Both the position numbers and the translations under genes were made by a program. The notes below the pieces were generated by a model. It saw nothing but the letters and a program-made list of their open reading frames with translations. It was not told the DNA's origin and ran no database searches. Shown here in pieces: positions 33,903 through 48,350 of a stretch of 53,451 nucleotides of DNA (within the stretch, counting starts at the first letter, position 1; each line of letters begins with the position of its first letter). The stretch lies in assembly GCF_001194135.2 (NCBI RefSeq), contig NC_069004.1, forward strand, positions 3,393,779-3,447,229. The letters run 5' to 3'. The DNA comes from Octopus bimaculoides. Its lineage: Eukaryota.

Positions 33903-34190
33903 TTAACTGACTCCATTCGACAAACAGCAAACCAGCTTGAGGTACGCTGGTTTCGAACACTGACCGATTGTCATATACTGTTGACAATGAGAGCAAACTT
34001 CAGGAATAGATTCTATGGATAAACCAGTTTGGTTTTCCTGCATGGAGATCCGATTTTCCATGAGTAACAATGAATAGGAATAGTGACCAATCTGTGTTAG
34101 GTATTTGGTCTTCTGCGTACGTCTCAAAGCTCGAATCTGGGAAAGTCTTTTCAGTTCAGTCAGGAGGTCTTCAACGTAATACTTCTGGAT
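33903..34190 (-). CDS. Probable terminal exon (IQKYYVEDLLTELKRLSQ...CSHCQQY...CSKPAYLKLVCCLSNGVS*)
   Basis: Acceptor ttttgtccgttccag|ATC in phase 0, matching the previous exon. 95 codons then TAA. Confidence 0.72.
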   Translation of the reverse strand: MQKYYVEDLLTELKRLSQIRALRRTQKTKYLTQIGHYSYSLLLMENRISMQENQTGLSIESIPEVCSHCQQYMTIGQCSKPAYLKLVCCLSNGVS

Positions 34191-34481
34191 CTGGAACGGA
34201 CAAAATAAATAAATAAATATACAAATAAATAAATGAATGAAAAAAAAAAAATTGGCATCGATTGTGTGGTCAAGAGATTCCTTTTCTAACGGCGAAGTTT
34301 CGGTCTTAGTCCAGCTGCACGGAATCTTGGGCAAGTATTTTCTAGTTTCGTCTCACGCCAACCGATGCCTTGTGAGTGAATTTGGTTAGAAGAAACCATT
34401 CTGTGTCTATCTGTCTGTCTGTCTGTCTGTCTGTATGTATGTATGTATGTATGTATGTATGTATGCATTTGTAAGTATATA

Positions 34482-34672
34482 CAATAATCCTCGCCATTTT
34501 GCAGTTCGTCTATCGCGGTTCACCTATCGCGGTTCATTATTTAAGCTTATGTTGATTCCACCGTGGTGTTGTTTTGCATTTATAATAAAATAAGTNNNNN
34601 NNNNNNNNNNNNNNNNNNNNNNNNNNNNNNNNNNNNNNNNNNNNNNNNNNNNNNNNNNNNNNNNNNNNNNNN

Positions 34673-34703
<31 letters not shown>

Positions 34704-34787
34704 ACAGTACTGTTTCTACTTCGCGGATTTTCAACTATCGCGTGGAGTTTTGGAACGTAACATCCGCGATAGTCGAGGGATTACTGT
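34482..34787 (+). mobile_element. pogo/Tigger-like MITE
   Basis: TA TSDs, TIR CA(A/G)TAATCCTCG / CGAGGGATTACTG, internal gap. Decayed copy at 3626-3818. Confidence 0.75.
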
Positions 34788-35005
34788 ACCAGTAGCACAT
34801 ACACTTTGTTTAGCACTAATAACTAACAAGCTTGAGCAATTTGAAATGGGCCTGAGTCTATTATGAGTAGAAATGGAATCTGTGTGTGTATGTATTTATT
34901 TCATTCATCAGATAACCAGGGGAGACAACTTCGGACCTAATTCAATCTCGGTAGTCACAAAATCCATTTTGTAAATCTGCAAGATTGTACGTTGGTCGTA
35001 CTCAC

Positions 35006-43768: not shown

Positions 43769-44788
43769 CTGGAAGTATATTTTGTAACTTTCTTCGATGG
43801 TCGTAAGGTGAATCCCTTGACGCATGGATTGGCTTATTTTCTCCCAGTTGTCATTAGCAATTCCAACTGATTCGAACAAAAGTCCCTTATTGTAGATATC
43901 TTCCGCCGTCTGTAAAGCTTTCCCTAGTATTTTTGAATATTTTAGATAAATAACATCATTACAATATACATGAGTGAAGGACCCGTTAACATAACGATAC
44001 ATCACTGATTTAAGCCGTTTACGAGTAAATTGCAGCATTGTTTGACTGATTTGTTTACTTAATCGAAGTCTTTGAAAATTGATTTTAGAGATTGTTTTCA
44101 AGCTCTCTGTTTGAAAATTTCCTTTTAAACATAATATATTCGTCTGGTCGTGGCCTTGATCTCTGTTGTTTCGTTGTGTTTTTCTAGGAACTAAATGCTT
44201 TCCTATATGGTCAATCACACGTGAGAATTGGTCGACATTTCCTTCCCCGTGGCACGGAGCAAAGCCATCTCGACAGCAGAGGTACGAACAAATATCTTCT
44301 AACGAATATTTCGACAAATGATTTGATAATAATTTAGCAATAGCTGTGAGCAAACCAGGCCGGAAGTTAGAATAAGCAGTGATAAAGTCTATACAAATAT
44401 CCGCCTCTTTTGAAACGTCTGCTTTGGACATTTGATAGAAAAGCAGACGTGAATCGGATACGGTTAGTGGAAGAAGATTGTATTCTCTCCAAGAAATATC
44501 CTTCAACGGAAACGGTTTCCAGTGAGCCATAATGAGAACAAATTTCTTATTGCAATGCGAAGATGAAAAGGAACGAAGGAAATGCTGAAATTCTTGGTGC
44601 CATTGGGGGTTCAACTTGTGGAAATCATCAAAAACGTAGATATTAATGCATTGTTGGTAGCTTTGATTGCTTCCTGAAAATTCCTTGAACCGTTTCTCTC
44701 GAATCGTTTTCCAGTCTTCAGAAGAGAAACTAACAATGTCTAGATGTATTTCTTGAGGATATTTTTCGCGTTTTAATTCATCCAGTAC
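43769..44788 (-). CDS. Internal exon (340 codons, phase 0-0) of a STAND/NB-ARC-like NTPase-TPR (NLR-like) gene: NTPase core after Walker A, helical/winged-helix and linker region
   Basis: Only long, complex ORF in the window. Acceptor gtctgttttcag|GTA at 44788, donor CAG|gtaaat at 43769. Walker B-like IYVFDD (44641-44624), strand KFVLIM at the sensor-1 position, YNLLPLTVSDSRLLF (resembles the LxxLsxeeaxxLF motif), SNFRPGLLTAIAKLL (GxP-like). Family call is by motif recognition, not HMM. Confidence 0.85.
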
Positions 44789-47700
44789 CTGAAAACAGAC
44801 AAAACAAAGAATTATAATTATATTATAATTAATATTATACAATCTTATAATTGATATTATACAATTATATTATAATTAATATTATACAATCTATATACCT
44901 AATATACATAGAAAACAAATAAGAAAAGTTCCGTCTAATGACGTAATGTAACAGGTATGTATGATAAGTGCAGAAGCTGGTTTTTTCCTCTCTGGAGACG
45001 ACGTAGTTAGCTTAAATGGAAATCTTTGCCCAATGACCTATGCACCATATGTACAGCTGTAAGAGATCTTATGCATTACTTCTTAATCCCTTATTTACTC
45101 TATCAACTCCGCGACTGCTTAAATCATAAATTACATGTTCTAGAGTGATACCACATGTTTTGCTTGTTCATTATTTCTTTTTAATATATACCTTGTTCGT
45201 TATTCCTTTTTGATATATACCTACATACATTATGCATGCACAAAATATCAAGTAAAAAATAATTCTATTTTCTTTTTTTTTTTGGTGTTGGGACAGAATT
45301 ATTTCATTCACCAATGCTCAGAGATAAACATATGCACATACATAAGAGCCGAAGGGCTCTGTTGCTGTTGTCAACGCACATATACATACATGCTGGCAGC
45401 GAGTGTAAATGGCCGGAAAGTGGCGATTGTGATGTCCCTTCTTTCTTTTTTAGGTGGTGGCATGTTTGTTGCCGTATATATATATATATATATATATATN
45501 NNNNNNNNNNNNNNNNNNNNNNNNNNNNNNNNNNNNNNNNNNNNNNNNNNNNNNNNNNNNNNNNNNNNNNNNNNNNNNNNNNNNNNNNNNNNNNNNNNNN
45601 NNNNNNNNNNNNNNNNNNNNNNNNNNNNNNNNNNNNNNNNNNNNNNNNNNNNNNNNNNNNNNNNNNNNNNNNNNNNNNNNNNNNNNNNNNNNNNNNNNNN
45701 NNNNNNNNNNNNNNNNNNNNNNNNNNNNNNNNNNNNNNNNNNNNNNNNNNNNNNNNNNNNNNNNNNNNNNNNNNNNNNNNNNNNNNNNNNNNNNNNNNNN
45801 NNNNNNNNNNNNNNNNNNNNNNNNNNNNNNNNNNNNNNNNNNNNNNNNNNNNNNNNNNNNNNNNNNNNNNNNNNNNNGAGAGAGGCATTAGAAAGAAAGA
45901 GAAAGAGAGGGGAGAGAGGGGAGAAATGGGAGAGAGAAAGAGGGAGAGAGAGAGAGAGAGAAATAGACAAGGCAGACAGCGAAATATAGAGACAGAAGGA
46001 GAGACCGCTAGGTTACGGGGACGTAAACACACCGACATCGGTTGTCAAGTGATGGTGGGAAGACAAACACAGACACACACACACGCACACACACACATGA
46101 CAGGCTTCTTTCTGTTTCCGTCTACCAAAATCCACTCACAAGGCTTTGGCTGACCCAAGTCAATAGTAGGAAACACTTGCCCAAGGTGCCACATAGTGGG
46201 CGGACTGAACCTGGGACCATGTGGTTGATATGCTAGCTACTTACCACACAGCCTTTATACTAAAACTCATTAATTCCCCGCCAAATATCGATGCAGTAAC
46301 TAGTACCCCCCCCCCCNNNNNNNNNNNNNNNNNNNNNNNNNNNNNNNNNNNNNNNCCCGCCTAAGGTATCCCACATTAATTTTTCTGATTCTATCCCAAG
46401 GAGCATATGGACCTTGGTTGAGGACCACTGGAACCCGACATATCTACCTTGGGGACTCCATCCTCCAGGTTTCCTGAATAGGTTTACTCCCTTAGCCTTT
46501 GTTTTCTTTTTTTCTTTTTTTTTTTTTGAAACGCTCAATAATTAGCTCATACAGACCTTGAATGAGAACCACTGGAAACGGACATATCTACGTTTGGGTT
46601 GCCACCGTCCGGATTTTCTGTCCGGTGGGGTTGCCACCTTAGCTTTTTTCGAAACGCTCAATAAATCGCCACACGGGGCATCAGGGGTTTATCATTATAG
46701 GAGGCATGGTTTGTGCAAGACCAGTCCCACCGTTTCCTCCTTTAGATTTGTATTGGTCTGGTGCACAATTGCCACGCGCCCAGTAGTTATCAGGAGGTAG
46801 GGTCTGTATGGAGTTATCTTCTCTTAAATGAGAAGCTAAAGAGCCGAAGGGCCTCATCTACATTGAGTCCGTTGAGGTGTCTCTAAGTGACCTTCTTCAT
46901 GAGCCAATTCCCTAACAGGCTAATGTTTTTTTTTTTATTATTATTTATTTTTAAACCGGAACTGCGTCGGTCACGACGACGAAGGTCCCAGTTGATCCAA
47001 TCAACGGAACAGCTTACCCGTGAAATTAACGTGCAGGTGGTTGAACACTCCACAATCACACGTGTAATAAAGTGTCTTGCTCAAGAACACAACTCGCCAT
47101 CTGGAATCGAACTCATGACCTAACGATTTCGAGCCGAATACCATAACCACTAAGCCACGCGCCTTCCCTAAGCTGCTAATTAATCCGAACCCTGACAGGT
47201 GCTAGTATTCCAGGCCAGAGTTCACCTGGGAACAAATATTGTCTAAGAAGTGGTTTTACATTTCCCAAAAAATCTGGAACTCACAAAATTAGGGTCCTGC
47301 CATCGGATACAGTCTCAGACCCGAGACCCGAGACAATAAAAACAACAACAACAACGACAGTAACAGCATAGACAATAATAACTGAAAGGAGAAAGCTTCG
47401 ACCCTCTAGAAATAGCAGCCAAATTCGCCCTCAAATCGCATTTTACCGTCTTCAGCAAAGAAGCATACTTTGGACAATTTAGTCATTTGCATTACAAAAA
47501 GTTCAGATTGGTCACGGCTGGAGCGCTTCTGATCATTAGTCTACTCGATGACCACCACAACCATCACCATCACCATCACCATCATCAACATCAACAATAC
47601 AAGTGAAAGACACTTTTTAACATGAAATATGGTGTTACTTCAATTTGTTGATACACACAACTTCTGTGTGTGTGTGTGCGTGTGTGTGTGTGTGTGCATG

Positions 47701-47851
47701 CGTGTATGTATGTATAAATCTATGTATAAATGTATGTATATAAATACAAATAAATAGATAGATTATATATTTAAACGTGTGTGTATACAGAACATATGTA
47801 TTATGCATGTATGTATGTATACATACATGAACACACACTCATATACAAACA

Positions 47852-47908
<57 letters not shown>

Positions 47909-48276
47909 GGAAAGAGAGATAGAGAGAGATCACACGGATAAATAAATTCGTGCATACATATATGTATATACAGATATATATATATGTATATTCTCACTCT
48001 ATATATACACATGTATAAAATACACATGCAGATTCACACACACGCAAATACACTCATACACACACACATTGGCACACACAAATACATCGTATACACACAC
48101 ACTGTTATCCATCATCCGAACACACGCGTTCGTAAGAAACATTGTCCAACTTAATTATTAGCAAGAACATATTTGAGTACACACTCTCTCACACATACAT
48201 ACCACACACACACACCACGCTCTCACACACACACACAATTTATAAGGTTTATATCTATATACGTTCAGGTACTTAC

Positions 48277-48350
48277 AAACTAACGGGTGAGGGGTTCGAG
48301 TAAAGTTCCCGTCTTCGAATTAAAACTTCTACGTCATGGCACCACAATTT
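48277..48350 (-). CDS. Candidate upstream exon of the NTPase-TPR gene (KLWCHDVEVLIRRRELYSNPSPVS), phase 0-2
   Basis: Strong acceptor tcctctgtcttctgtag| and donor |gtaagt, 74 nt of unique sequence amid microsatellites. Linkage to the 44788 exon needs an unseen phase 2-0 exon. Confidence 0.45.

What the first reader, a model, noticed from the sequence alone, without database searches (positions are those of the whole stretch)
33903..48350. Hidden NLR-like gene: STAND/NB-ARC-type NTPase plus TPR superhelix
Seen: a 340-codon exon, and separately five exons that splice together in exact phase (1-1, 1-1, 1-2, 2-0, 0-stop) into a continuous TPR protein; two of these coding frames are absent from the ORF track. 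Known: STAND NTPase + TPR is the NLR-like sensor architecture of fungi, bacteria and some invertebrates, where the repeats sense ligand and the NTPase oligomerises. Inferred: a non-LRR NLR-type innate-immune or cell-death receptor in an apparent cephalopod, likely annotated only as an uncharacterised or TPR protein.
Basis: partly seen in the sequence, partly recalled or inferred. Interest (0 to 1): 0.8.

Follow-up and report, generated by a model that had tools for sequence, protein, structure and literature searches.

The report
Octopus NB-ARC-like NTPase–TPR gene
The six exons are real and belong to one gap-broken octopus gene for a switch-type ATPase joined to a TPR repeat domain, an architecture known from immune and cell-death sensors, but its P-loop exon is not in the readable sequence and an immune role is only a guess.

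Summary
On the minus strand there is a 340-codon exon (44788-43769) and five further exons: 37580-37467, 37243-37100, 36004-35893, 35267-35006 and 34190-33903. All have AG/GT splice sites and phases 1-1, 1-1, 1-2, 2-0 and 0-stop. The five splice into an open 306-residue TPR protein (Pfam TPR_12, E 3.4e-12).

They form one gene, the orthologue of 'uncharacterized protein LOC115232051'. The Octopus sinensis copy is 94% identical. The Argonauta hians copy is a full 826-residue, 10-exon model whose last five exons match the window's in length and phase.

Four exons are missing from this assembly. Exon 1 (Walker A) and exon 3 fall exactly at gap edges (45500-45877 and 42739-42748). Exons 4-5 are unlocated.

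The N-terminal module has a P-loop AAA+/STAND fold. The best structural match is a solved STAND-TPR protein. A profile-profile alignment with cyanobacterial NB-ARC-TPR proteins runs in register from FxGR to the MHD position (88%, E 3e-6). It fails Pfam's NB-ARC cut-off and lacks the sensor-1 Arg, the MHD His and any effector domain.

The family appears restricted to cephalopods, with about six loci in this genome. An immune or cell-death role is untested. I rate it a new, divergent member of a known kind, of moderate interest.

The parts
43769..44788 (-). Exon 2 (340 codons, phase 0-0). It encodes most of the nucleotide-binding oligomerisation module after the P-loop helix: strand 2, Walker B, strands 4-5, the ARC1-like helical bundle, a degenerate winged-helix region and a strongly conserved 'arm'.
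   Evidence: Open frame and AG/GT sites. 94% identical to O. sinensis and 52% to A. hians. dN/dS 0.23.
44621..44647 (-). Walker B motif, INIYVFDDF (hhhhDD, as in NB-ARC).
   Evidence: Family alignment A3. It aligns with ILIVFDD of cyanobacterial NB-ARC proteins. Coordinates.
44327..44476 (-). LLPLTVSDSRLLF (RNBS-C-like) followed by NFRPGLLTAIAKLL (GLPL/GxP-like). The Pro-Gly is invariant in the family; paralogues read GLPGLL.
   Evidence: (in-register alignment to barley MLA13, not significant on its own).
43808..43960 (-). The most conserved block of the family (ND..LKY..I.GK.L..AE.IY.KGL..E..GI...NW..I......GIH). It is a helical 'arm' between the NOD and the TPRs and has no counterpart in Pfam.
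   Evidence: Invariant columns in A2, A3 and A4. AF2 confidence is low here.
37467..37580 (-). Exon 6 (114 nt, phase 1-1), TPR.
   Evidence: Same length and phase as A. hians exon 6; 85% identical.
37100..37243 (-). Exon 7 (144 nt, phase 1-1), TPR.
   Evidence: 94% identical to A. hians. Its frame is absent from the ORF list of 60 aa or more.
35893..36004 (-). Exon 8 (112 nt, phase 1-2), TPR.
   Evidence: 76% identical to A. hians. Its frame is absent from the ORF list of 60 aa or more.
35006..35267 (-). Exon 9 (262 nt, phase 2-0), TPRs of the kinesin-light-chain type.
   Evidence: 79% identical to A. hians.
33903..34190 (-). Exon 10 (288 nt including the TAA stop). It encodes the C-terminal helices and a conserved IP..C..C motif at 33984-34007.
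   Evidence: 83% identical to A. hians. The CxxC is invariant in the four full-length relatives.
45500..45877 (.). Assembly gap where exon 1 should lie (start codon, FIGR...E...LK, Walker A GLPHIGKT; ends in phase 0).
   Evidence: The O. sinensis alignment resumes exactly at 45499, inside a (TA)n run. Exon 1 ends 346 nt upstream of that point in O. sinensis. The exon is found nowhere else in the assembly.
42739..42748 (.). Assembly gap (10 N, size unknown) where exon 3 should lie (157 nt, phase 0-1).
   Evidence: The O. sinensis alignment stops at 42749 in a (TA)n run. In O. sinensis exon 3 starts 23 nt beyond that same microsatellite.
41421..42512 (.). Stretch holding two further gaps (41421-41544 and 42296-42512) and microsatellites. 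It is a possible but unproven location for exons 4-5 (148 + 110 nt, frame-neutral together).
   Evidence: Exons 4-5 are not detectable in any readable part of the window or genome. Exon lengths.

Best explanation
The finding is one protein-coding gene on the minus strand. It spans at least 33903 to about 46000 and is the Octopus orthologue of 'uncharacterized protein LOC115232051'.

**Predicted product.** The full product is about 830-850 residues:
1. A short N-terminus with no effector domain.
2. An NB-ARC-like STAND nucleotide-binding oligomerisation module: FxGR...Walker A, Walker B hhhhDD, a GLPL-like P-G motif and a degenerate winged helix.
3. A family-specific, highly conserved helical 'arm'.
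4. About seven kinesin-light-chain-type TPRs.
5. A small C-terminal segment with an invariant CxxC.

**State in this assembly.** Six of ten coding exons are readable. Exon 1 and exon 3 were lost where the assembler broke at (TA)n microsatellites. Exons 4-5 are unlocated.

**Likely mechanism, inferred by analogy with solved STAND proteins (MalT, the P. horikoshii STAND-TPR protein 6mfv, Apaf-1, plant NLRs).** The TPR sensor and the arm would clamp the nucleotide-binding module in a closed, ADP-bound monomer. Binding of a ligand in the TPR groove would release the clamp and allow ADP-to-ATP exchange and self-association into an oligomeric platform. With no effector domain of its own, the protein would have to signal by recruiting a partner. 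The output pathway (immune, cell-death or other) is unknown.

**Shown:** gene structure, orthology, purifying selection, domain architecture, P-loop/AAA+-STAND fold, TPR type.
**Inferred:** nucleotide switching, oligomerisation, ligand sensing, biological role.
For: **Gene structure**
- Exons, splice sites and phases.
- The last five exons have the same lengths and phases as A. hians exons 6-10.
- Orthologues were retrieved with E 1e-264 and 9e-217.
- Both orthologues carry exon 1, ending ...YGLP(H/Y)IGKT..V(K/R)(T/K), directly in front of the residues that begin window exon 2 (VLDELK; VLEEFK in A. hians).
- Synteny breaks fall exactly at the gap edges.

**Selection and expression**
- dN/dS is 0.23 against O. 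sinensis and 0.17 against A. hians for exon 2.
- Paralogue P0007 is encoded without introns on RNA-derived contigs, with NTPase plus TPR in one ORF.

**Fold**
- AF2 of the O. sinensis orthologue gives five strands and helices plus a 4-helix bundle at pLDDT 70-86 for residues 25-235.
- Foldseek's top hit is 6mfv_A, a solved STAND-TPR protein, at E 1.4e-6. The full-length A. hians model gives the same top hit at E 1.7e-7 over 818 columns.
- RFC/ORC/Cdc6 and the plant NLRs NRC2/NRC3 follow in the hit list.

**Sequence**
- Pfam NB-ARC hits two paralogues at E 5e-5 and 8.5e-5; the longer one covers profile positions 2-203 of 248.
- hhalign of the family NOD profile against 16 cyanobacterial NB-ARC-TPR proteins gives 88% probability, E 2.9e-6, over 295 columns with all motifs in register. 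The reversed-sequence control gives 0.3%.

**TPR**
- Pfam TPR_12, E 3.4e-12.
- Kinesin light chains in the PDB, E 4e-14.
- Foldseek against KLC1: TM 0.77, 26% identity.
Against: - The window's own sequence has no Walker A, so an intact ATPase in this species is inferred from orthologues only.
- Exon 2 alone hits nothing in Pfam or in PDB sequences.
- Every NB-ARC score is below Pfam's gathering cut-off.
- Fold search cannot separate STAND from the clamp-loader and initiator AAA+ clades.
- The winged-helix and arm region is modelled at pLDDT below 50.
- The sensor-1 Arg of NB-ARC (TTR) is not conserved.
- The MHD His is Gln in paralogues and unrecognisable in this gene's lineage. Hydrolysis-coupled switching may therefore be altered or lost.
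- By A. hians intron spacing, exons 4-5 would lie in gap-free sequence, yet they are not there.
- No expression, interaction or phenotype data were found. No paper mentions the locus.
Confidence: 0.6

Rival explanations
1. Same gene and architecture, but not an immune or cell-death sensor. It would be a housekeeping or cytoskeletal/ciliary scaffold of the nephrocystin-3 or kinesin-light-chain kind. The P-loop module would regulate assembly and the TPRs would bind cargo or partner peptides.
For: - The TPRs are closest to kinesin light chains.
- There is a weak NPHP3_N hit in a paralogue (E 0.016).
- No effector domain is present.
- The family is small: about six loci, against the tens to hundreds typical of expanded invertebrate immune receptor families.
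- Purifying selection on exon 2 (dN/dS 0.23) looks like a conserved function rather than an arms race.
Against: - NPHP3_N and TPR_NPHP3 are not matched at their thresholds.
- The family is restricted to cephalopods: 7 hits among 1.8 billion representative proteins. That is unusual for core cell-biology machinery.
- Paralogues lie in tandem clusters, which is typical of fast-evolving sensor families.
Confidence: 0.25
2. In this species the gene is decaying or already a pseudogene. Exons 1 and 3-5 would be truly deleted rather than hidden in gaps, and the readable exons would be relics.
For: - Four of ten exons cannot be found anywhere in the 2.34 Gb assembly.
- Exons 4-5 would be expected in gap-free sequence by A. 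hians spacing.
- The winged-helix motifs have decayed in this orthologue lineage compared with paralogues.
Against: - All six readable exons are open and have intact canonical splice sites.
- dN/dS is 0.23 over dS 0.12 since the split from O. sinensis.
- The alignments to O. sinensis stop precisely at N runs inside (TA)n tracts next to where exons 1 and 3 lie. That is the signature of assembly drop-out.
- Motif decay is shared with A. hians, so it is old and compatible with function.
Confidence: 0.1
3. The NTPase exon and the TPR exons belong to two different neighbouring genes, and their common strand and order are coincidental.
For: - They cannot be spliced to each other directly (phase 0 against phase 1).
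- 6.2 kb with three gaps separates them.
- The O. sinensis model stops after 505 residues.
Against: - The O. sinensis model stops because its contig ends.
- The A. hians model is continuous across all ten exons.
- Paralogues P0004 and P0007 have the same fusion, P0007 on intron-free transcript contigs.
- The missing phase 0-1 exon exists in O. sinensis at the syntenic spot.
Confidence: 0.03

Closest known systems
Prokaryotic NB-ARC-TPR / STAND-TPR proteins (cyanobacterial 'tetratricopeptide repeat protein / putative kinesin light chain' with Pfam NB-ARC; P. horikoshii STAND-TPR, PDB 6mfv)
   Same: - The order of parts is the same: FxGR, Walker A, hhhhDD, GLPL-type motif, winged helix, then TPR_10/TPR_12 repeats.
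- It is the best structural match.
- The profile-profile alignment runs in register across the whole NOD.
- Many of these proteins also lack an N-terminal effector domain.
   Different: - About 14% identity.
- No conserved sensor-1 Arg, and no His at the MHD position.
- An extra, strongly conserved helical arm and a C-terminal CxxC segment.
- It is an animal gene with ten coding exons.
- No sign of recent transfer: there were no bacterial hits to exon 2.
Apaf-1 / CED-4 / Dark and plant NLRs (AP-ATPase or NB-ARC clade of STAND; Leipe et al. 2004, from my own knowledge)
   Same: - Walker B is DD.
- The RNBS-C-like L.PL....LF and GLPL-like motifs are present.
- Paralogues keep LSxFPGxF and F.VQ.LIRD where NB-ARC has its winged-helix 'FP' and 'MHD' motifs.
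- NRC2/NRC3 appear among the fold hits.
- Pfam NB-ARC scores are just under the threshold.
   Different: - No CARD, CC or TIR domain at the N-terminus.
- TPR in place of WD40 or LRR.
- Sensor-1 Arg and MHD His are absent.
- It is below Pfam's cut-off.
Animal NLRs in the strict sense (NACHT-LRR) and the wider invertebrate 'NBD complex' with TPR/ANK/WD40 repeats (PMC3879445)
   Same: - A STAND NTPase followed by a repeat sensor.
- Lineage-specific, tandemly clustered paralogues.
- NACHT or NB-ARC domains joined to TPRs are already recorded in placozoans, ctenophores, cnidarians and arthropods (PMC3879445).
   Different: - No NACHT signal at all for the orthologues or the paralogues scanned.
- No LRR.
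- No Death-fold effector domain.
- A small family.
Nephrocystin-3 (NPHP3) and kinesin light chains
   Same: The TPRs are of the KLC type (TPR_12). NPHP3 also combines a P-loop STAND-like module with KLC-type TPRs.
   Different: - NPHP3_N, NPHP3_hel and TPR_NPHP3 are not matched at their thresholds.
- No coiled-coil or TTL-like N-terminal region.
- Not an orthologue of either.

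Membership tests
STAND NTPase superfamily | P-loop NTPase core with Walker A G-x4-GK[ST], in the window's own sequence | tested here: inconclusive
   No family-like Walker A exists in readable sequence. The single regex hit at 48595 is a chance match between microsatellites. The exon is expected in the gap 45500-45877.
STAND NTPase superfamily | Walker A in orthologues and paralogues | tested here: met
   GLPHIGKT (O. sinensis), GLPYIGKT (A. hians), GLPYVGKT and GQPCVGKS (paralogues). 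All are preceded by F/L-x-GR...E...LK.
STAND NTPase superfamily | Walker B hhhhD[DE] on strand 3 | tested here: met
   IYVFDDF at 44621-44647. It is conserved in most members and lies on strand E111-117 of the AF2 model.
STAND NTPase superfamily | AAA+-like alpha/beta fold followed by a helical bundle and a winged helix | tested here: inconclusive
   The alpha/beta core and the 4-helix bundle are modelled at pLDDT 70-86. Top fold hits are 6mfv (STAND-TPR), RFC, ORC/Cdc6 and NRC2/3. The winged-helix region is at pLDDT below 50. It is supported only by the in-register profile alignment.
STAND NTPase superfamily | C-terminal superstructure-forming repeats | tested here: met
   TPR_12 at 46.8 bits (cut-off 30.1) on the spliced window exons. 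About seven TPR pairs are modelled at pLDDT 70-92 in the orthologue.
NB-ARC (Pfam PF00931) | Score at or above Pfam's gathering cut-off (23.5 bits) | tested here: not met
   Window exon: no hit. Orthologues: 12.8 and 13.5 bits. Paralogues: 23.0 and 22.4 bits.
NB-ARC (Pfam PF00931) | GLPL / GxP motif in the helical domain | tested here: met
   Pro-Gly is invariant. It reads GLPGL(L/I) in paralogues and FRPGLL in this gene (44327-44368). It aligns to the LPLG(I/L) motif of cyanobacterial NB-ARC proteins and to GGVPLAI of MLA13.
NB-ARC (Pfam PF00931) | Sensor-1 Arg after strand 4 (RNBS-B 'TTR') | tested here: not met
   The position reads LIMAHWKP, LILSGGEP or IIIHQRLL. No Arg is conserved.
NB-ARC (Pfam PF00931) | MHD-type His in the winged helix | tested here: not met
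   Paralogues have F(Q/K)(V/M)Q.LIRD, with Gln aligned to the His. This gene's lineage reads FTRKRLKSVMYRY.
Bona fide animal NLR (NACHT-LRR) | NACHT domain and leucine-rich repeats | tested here: not met
   No NACHT or LRR hit in the orthologues, or in the paralogues scanned, at E up to 0.1-0.5. The repeats are TPRs.
Apaf-1 / CED-4 apoptosome proteins | N-terminal CARD and C-terminal WD40 repeats (Apaf-1, Dark) | tested here: not met
   Only 8-40 residues precede the FxGR motif. There are no CARD, Death-fold or WD40 hits.
Nephrocystin-3-like | Pfam NPHP3_N, NPHP3_hel and TPR_NPHP3 above threshold | tested here: not met
   The only hit is NPHP3_N at 15.8 bits (cut-off 24.8) in one paralogue.
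STAND NTPase superfamily | Nucleotide-dependent switching and ligand-induced oligomerisation | not testable with these tools
   This needs biochemistry on the expressed protein.

The most novel reading that the evidence does not exclude
Octopods, and perhaps cephalopods at large, may have evolved their own small family of effector-less NB-ARC-like/TPR sensors. In this family the unusually conserved 'arm' and the C-terminal CxxC segment would replace the missing CARD/Death/TIR effector as the signalling surface. The loss of the sensor-1 Arg and MHD His would mark a changed nucleotide switch. On this reading it would be a lineage-specific branch of intracellular innate immunity or regulated cell death in an animal group whose cytosolic sensing is almost uncharted.
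Probability: 0.15. Interest if true: 0.6.

Novelty: new member of a known kind. Interest (0 to 1): 0.35.

Why it matters
STAND NTPase plus repeat proteins are the common hardware of intracellular immune and death sensors in plants, animals, fungi and bacteria. In cephalopods this layer is barely described. I found no paper that links NB-ARC, TPR and octopus, and none that mentions this locus.

This family is too divergent for Pfam's NB-ARC threshold and is labelled 'uncharacterized' in public annotation. Domain-count surveys of molluscan immune repertoires will therefore miss it.

There is also a practical point. In this assembly the gene is broken at microsatellites, so automatic annotation probably yields fragments or nothing. 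The case shows how (TA)n-rich octopus introns remove exons from short-read assemblies.

If the protein were shown to sense a ligand and oligomerise without an effector domain, it would be a useful comparison for how such switches couple to downstream pathways. If not, it remains an ordinary lineage-specific paralogue family.

Tried and rejected
1. **Direct Pfam and PDB sequence searches with exon 2 alone.** Nothing was found. Homologues had to be collected first.

2. **Looking for the Walker-A exon in the window.**
   - tblastn with four relatives and a G-x4-GK[ST] scan gave only the hit at 48595 (-).
   - I rejected that hit. It lies between (GA)n and (TA)n, has only 15 residues between 'FGK' and GKT against about 31 in the family, and has no donor site at the family position.

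3. **Looking for the four missing exons elsewhere in the genome.** Only paralogue hits of 45-55% identity turned up.

4. **Six-frame search of the genome with Pfam NB-ARC.** No hit, which is uninformative because the domain is split by introns.

5. **Profile of the whole protein against PDB sequences.** TPR proteins dominated. The NTPase part gave only weak RFC (E 0.029) and plant NLR (E 0.06-0.5) hits. The NOD-only profile gave MLA13 at E 0.25, not significant.

6. **hhalign against a single NB-ARC-TPR sequence.** Only the P-loop aligned, 45 columns. A 16-sequence profile was needed.

7. **NCBIfam and PADLOC libraries.** They returned only generic AAA+ and TPR noise.

8. **Wider word-based homologue search.** Outside cephalopods, only TPR-driven matches such as P0011 appeared.

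9. **Using the SINE copy next to O. sinensis exon 4 to place exons 4-5.** I rejected this because the same repeat occurs at least ten times in the window.

10. **dS for the TPR exons against A. hians.** It is saturated, so no omega could be computed.

Full report
**1. What is in the sequence**

The window is G000:C24:3393779-3447229 of a 2.34 Gb assembly in 145,327 contigs. It is AT-rich, full of microsatellites, and carries 12 N runs.

On the minus strand the only long, complex, gap-free open frame is 43742-44869, at 375 codons. About 7e-7 frames of that length are expected by chance at this base composition. Inside it lies an exon of exactly 340 codons, 44788-43769. It is bounded by a pyrimidine tract plus AG and by GTAAAT, and is phase 0 at both ends.

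Five further exons follow downstream on the same strand:

| Exon | Coordinates | Phase |
|---|---|---|
| 6 | 37580-37467 | 1-1 |
| 7 | 37243-37100 | 1-1 |
| 8 | 36004-35893 | 1-2 |
| 9 | 35267-35006 | 2-0 |
| 10 | 34190-33903 | 0-TAA |

- All five have canonical splice sites. Spliced, they give an uninterrupted 306-residue protein that hits Pfam TPR_12 at 46.8 bits.
- None of the six exons touches an assembly gap.

**2. One gene, known elsewhere only as 'uncharacterized'**

- A scan of 1.84 billion representative proteins with exon 2 found only seven relatives.
- A word-based search with the concatenated exons returned two orthologues, both named 'uncharacterized protein LOC115232051'. One is O. 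sinensis, 505 residues, truncated because its contig ends. The other is Argonauta hians, 826 residues.
- Exon 2 is 94% identical to O. sinensis and 52% to A. hians. Exons 6-10 are 76-94% identical to A. hians.
- Threading the A. hians protein onto its genome gives ten coding exons of 141, 1005, 157, 148, 110, 114, 144, 112, 262 and 288 nt. The last five are identical in length and phase to the window's five TPR exons.
- Paralogues show the same fusion. They are O. vulgaris LOC118767588 (772 residues) and a 1195-residue protein. The latter is encoded without introns on 4.3-4.8 kb contigs assembled from sequencing runs, which means spliced mRNA.
- Exon 2 has dN/dS 0.23 (dS 0.12) against O. sinensis and 0.17 against A. 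hians.

**3. What is missing, and the gaps**

Exon 2 ends in phase 0 and exon 6 begins in phase 1, so intermediate exons must exist. Four parts of the orthologues have no match in the readable window or anywhere else in the assembly. These are exon 1 (start codon, FIGR..E..LK, Walker A GLPHIGKT) and exons 3-5 (the first TPRs). Only paralogue hits of 45-55% identity appear.

DNA synteny with the O. sinensis contig explains two of the four:

- **Exon 1.** The alignment resumes at window 45499, the last base before the N run 45500-45877 and inside a (TA)n tract. O. sinensis exon 1 ends 346 nt upstream of that point.
- **Exon 3.** The alignment stops at window 42749, the base next to the N run 42739-42748 and again in (TA)n. 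O. sinensis exon 3 (phase 0-1) starts 23 nt beyond the same microsatellite.

Exons 4-5 (258 nt together, frame-neutral) are not placed:

- They may sit in the gaps 42296-42512 or 41421-41544.
- By A. hians spacing, however, they would lie in gap-free sequence and they are not there. Loss in this species cannot be excluded.

The gap 34596-34672 lies in the last intron and hides no exon. The single G-x4-GK[ST] in the window (48595, -) is a chance match between microsatellites.

**4. What the protein is**

*The NTPase module.* Family alignments show the following motifs in order:
- F/L-x-GR...E...LK;
- Walker A;
- Walker B hhFDDF (window 44621-44647);
- L.PL....D...LF;
- an invariant P-G in (G)LPGLL (window 44327-44368).

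Paralogues additionally have LSxFPGxF and F(Q/K)(V/M)Q.LIRD where NB-ARC proteins have their winged-helix 'FP' and 'MHD' motifs. This gene's lineage has largely lost those two.

*Pfam NB-ARC.* It scores 23.0 and 22.4 bits for two paralogues (E 5e-5 and 8.5e-5, up to positions 2-203 of 248) against a cut-off of 23.5. Orthologues score only 12.8-13.5 bits, and window exon 2 alone gets no hit.

*Profile-profile test.* I compared a profile of the family's N-terminal module with a profile of 16 cyanobacterial proteins that carry Pfam NB-ARC plus TPR_10/12.
- The local alignment has 295 columns, 88% probability and E 2.9e-6. It runs from FxGR to the MHD position with every motif in register.
- The reversed-sequence control gives 0.1-0.3%.

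*Structure prediction.*
- For the O. sinensis orthologue, AlphaFold2 gives a confident (pLDDT 70-86) strand-helix core with Walker A after strand 1 and Walker B on strand 3, followed by a four-helix bundle.
- The next 150-180 residues, covering the winged helix and arm, are at low confidence.
- Foldseek against the PDB ranks the solved STAND-TPR protein 6mfv first (E 1.4e-6), then RFC small subunits, ORC/Cdc6, and the plant NLRs NRC2/NRC3.
- The full-length A. hians model again puts 6mfv first (E 1.7e-7, 818 columns), followed by LGN/Pins and kinesin-light-chain TPR domains (KLC1: TM 0.77, 26% identity).

*The TPR part.* It has about seven repeats and is of the kinesin-light-chain type.

*Features not found in the known families compared here:*
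- a very strongly conserved helical block between the NOD and the TPRs (window 43808-43960);
- an invariant CxxC in the C-terminal segment (33984-34007);
- no conserved sensor-1 Arg and no MHD His;
- no N-terminal effector domain, with only 8-40 residues before FxGR.

**5. How it probably works**

By analogy with solved STAND proteins (MalT, PMC4381067; 6mfv; Apaf-1 and plant NLRs, from my own knowledge), the repeat sensor and arm would hold the nucleotide-binding module closed on ADP. Ligand binding would allow exchange for ATP and oligomerisation.

That step is inferred and not tested here. Without an effector domain the output must go through a recruited partner. Whether the pathway is immune, cell-death or something else is open.

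Two features fit a non-immune scaffold about as well:
- the family is small, with about six loci in this genome, mostly in two clusters on contig C23;
- exon 2 is under purifying selection.

Lineage restriction and tandem clustering lean the other way.

**6. Comparison and novelty**

NACHT or NB-ARC domains joined to TPRs are already recorded in several invertebrate phyla (PMC3879445) and are common in bacteria. The architecture is therefore not new.

This family is a divergent, apparently cephalopod-restricted member. It escapes Pfam's threshold and is unnamed in public annotation. No paper links NB-ARC, TPR and octopus, or cites the locus.

It is not a bona fide NLR (no NACHT, no LRR), not an Apaf-1 orthologue (no CARD, no WD40) and not NPHP3.

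**7. Verdict**

- **Observation:** confirmed.
- **Interpretation:** the architecture, the single-gene reading and the annotation status are supported. The 'NLR-type immune or cell-death receptor' label is an untested analogy. The catalytic P-loop exon is not in the window's readable sequence.
- **Novelty:** a new member of a known kind.
- **Interest:** moderate, 0.35.

Noticed in passing
window 555-702, 4318-4465, 15881-16078, 18140-18261, 24362-24509, 27255-27402, 32401-32548, 37687-37884, 39946-40143, 46073-46250, 53330-53451: A SINE-like interspersed repeat of about 150-200 nt occurs in at least ten copies, in both orientations, at 64-89% identity. Two copies lie in introns of the gene. The same element is found next to exon 4 in O. 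sinensis, so it cannot be used for synteny.
   Followed up: partly
window 7534-7654 / 7666-7786, with mirrored ORFs at 7078-7455 (-) and 7856-8263 (+): A near-perfect 121-nt inverted repeat (98% complementary, 11 nt spacer) sits in the middle of a larger palindromic duplication, next to the gap 7293-7385. It is either a foldback element or an assembly artefact.
   Followed up: no
window 52570-52833 (-): This short open frame looks like the helix-turn-helix N-terminus of a mariner/Tc1-type transposase (…GREGLEDNPRSGSPATATTQENIDRV…). The only Pfam support is a weak HTH_32 hit (E 0.005). It is probably a transposon relic.
   Followed up: partly
window 25403-25866 (+) and 36646-36801 (-): Another dispersed repeat of 140-154 nt, at 83-91% identity, encodes the recurring peptide …LYCPQGAKHRGDKQGQTKGLSRLH… One copy lies in the intron between exons 7 and 8. 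It has no Pfam hit.
   Followed up: no
window 30000-32000: A 2-kb stretch has extreme strand asymmetry (GC skew +0.56, AT skew +0.27). It consists of purine-rich (GA)n-type simple repeats, which read as SLSLSL… on the minus strand.
   Followed up: no
G000:C23:23.81-23.87 Mb and 24.10-24.15 Mb; also C96093, C10525, C69238, C42663, C23:34.88 Mb: Paralogues of the gene (25-30% identical to it) form two tandem clusters on another chromosome-scale contig, with copies on both strands. Several exon matches contain stop codons. Some copies may be pseudogenes, or the stops may come from read-through into introns.
   Followed up: partly
L007 1-1775 (Argonauta hians, upstream of the orthologue): The upstream neighbour of the A. 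hians orthologue is a 938-residue protein with RAMA and JAB (MPN) domains. I did not check whether the same neighbour lies beside the window.
   Followed up: no
paralogue P0007, residues about 850-1195 (L008 / L009): One paralogue carries a C-terminal tail of about 340 residues, low in complexity and rich in Ser, Lys and Asn, which the other family members lack. Its function is unknown.
   Followed up: no
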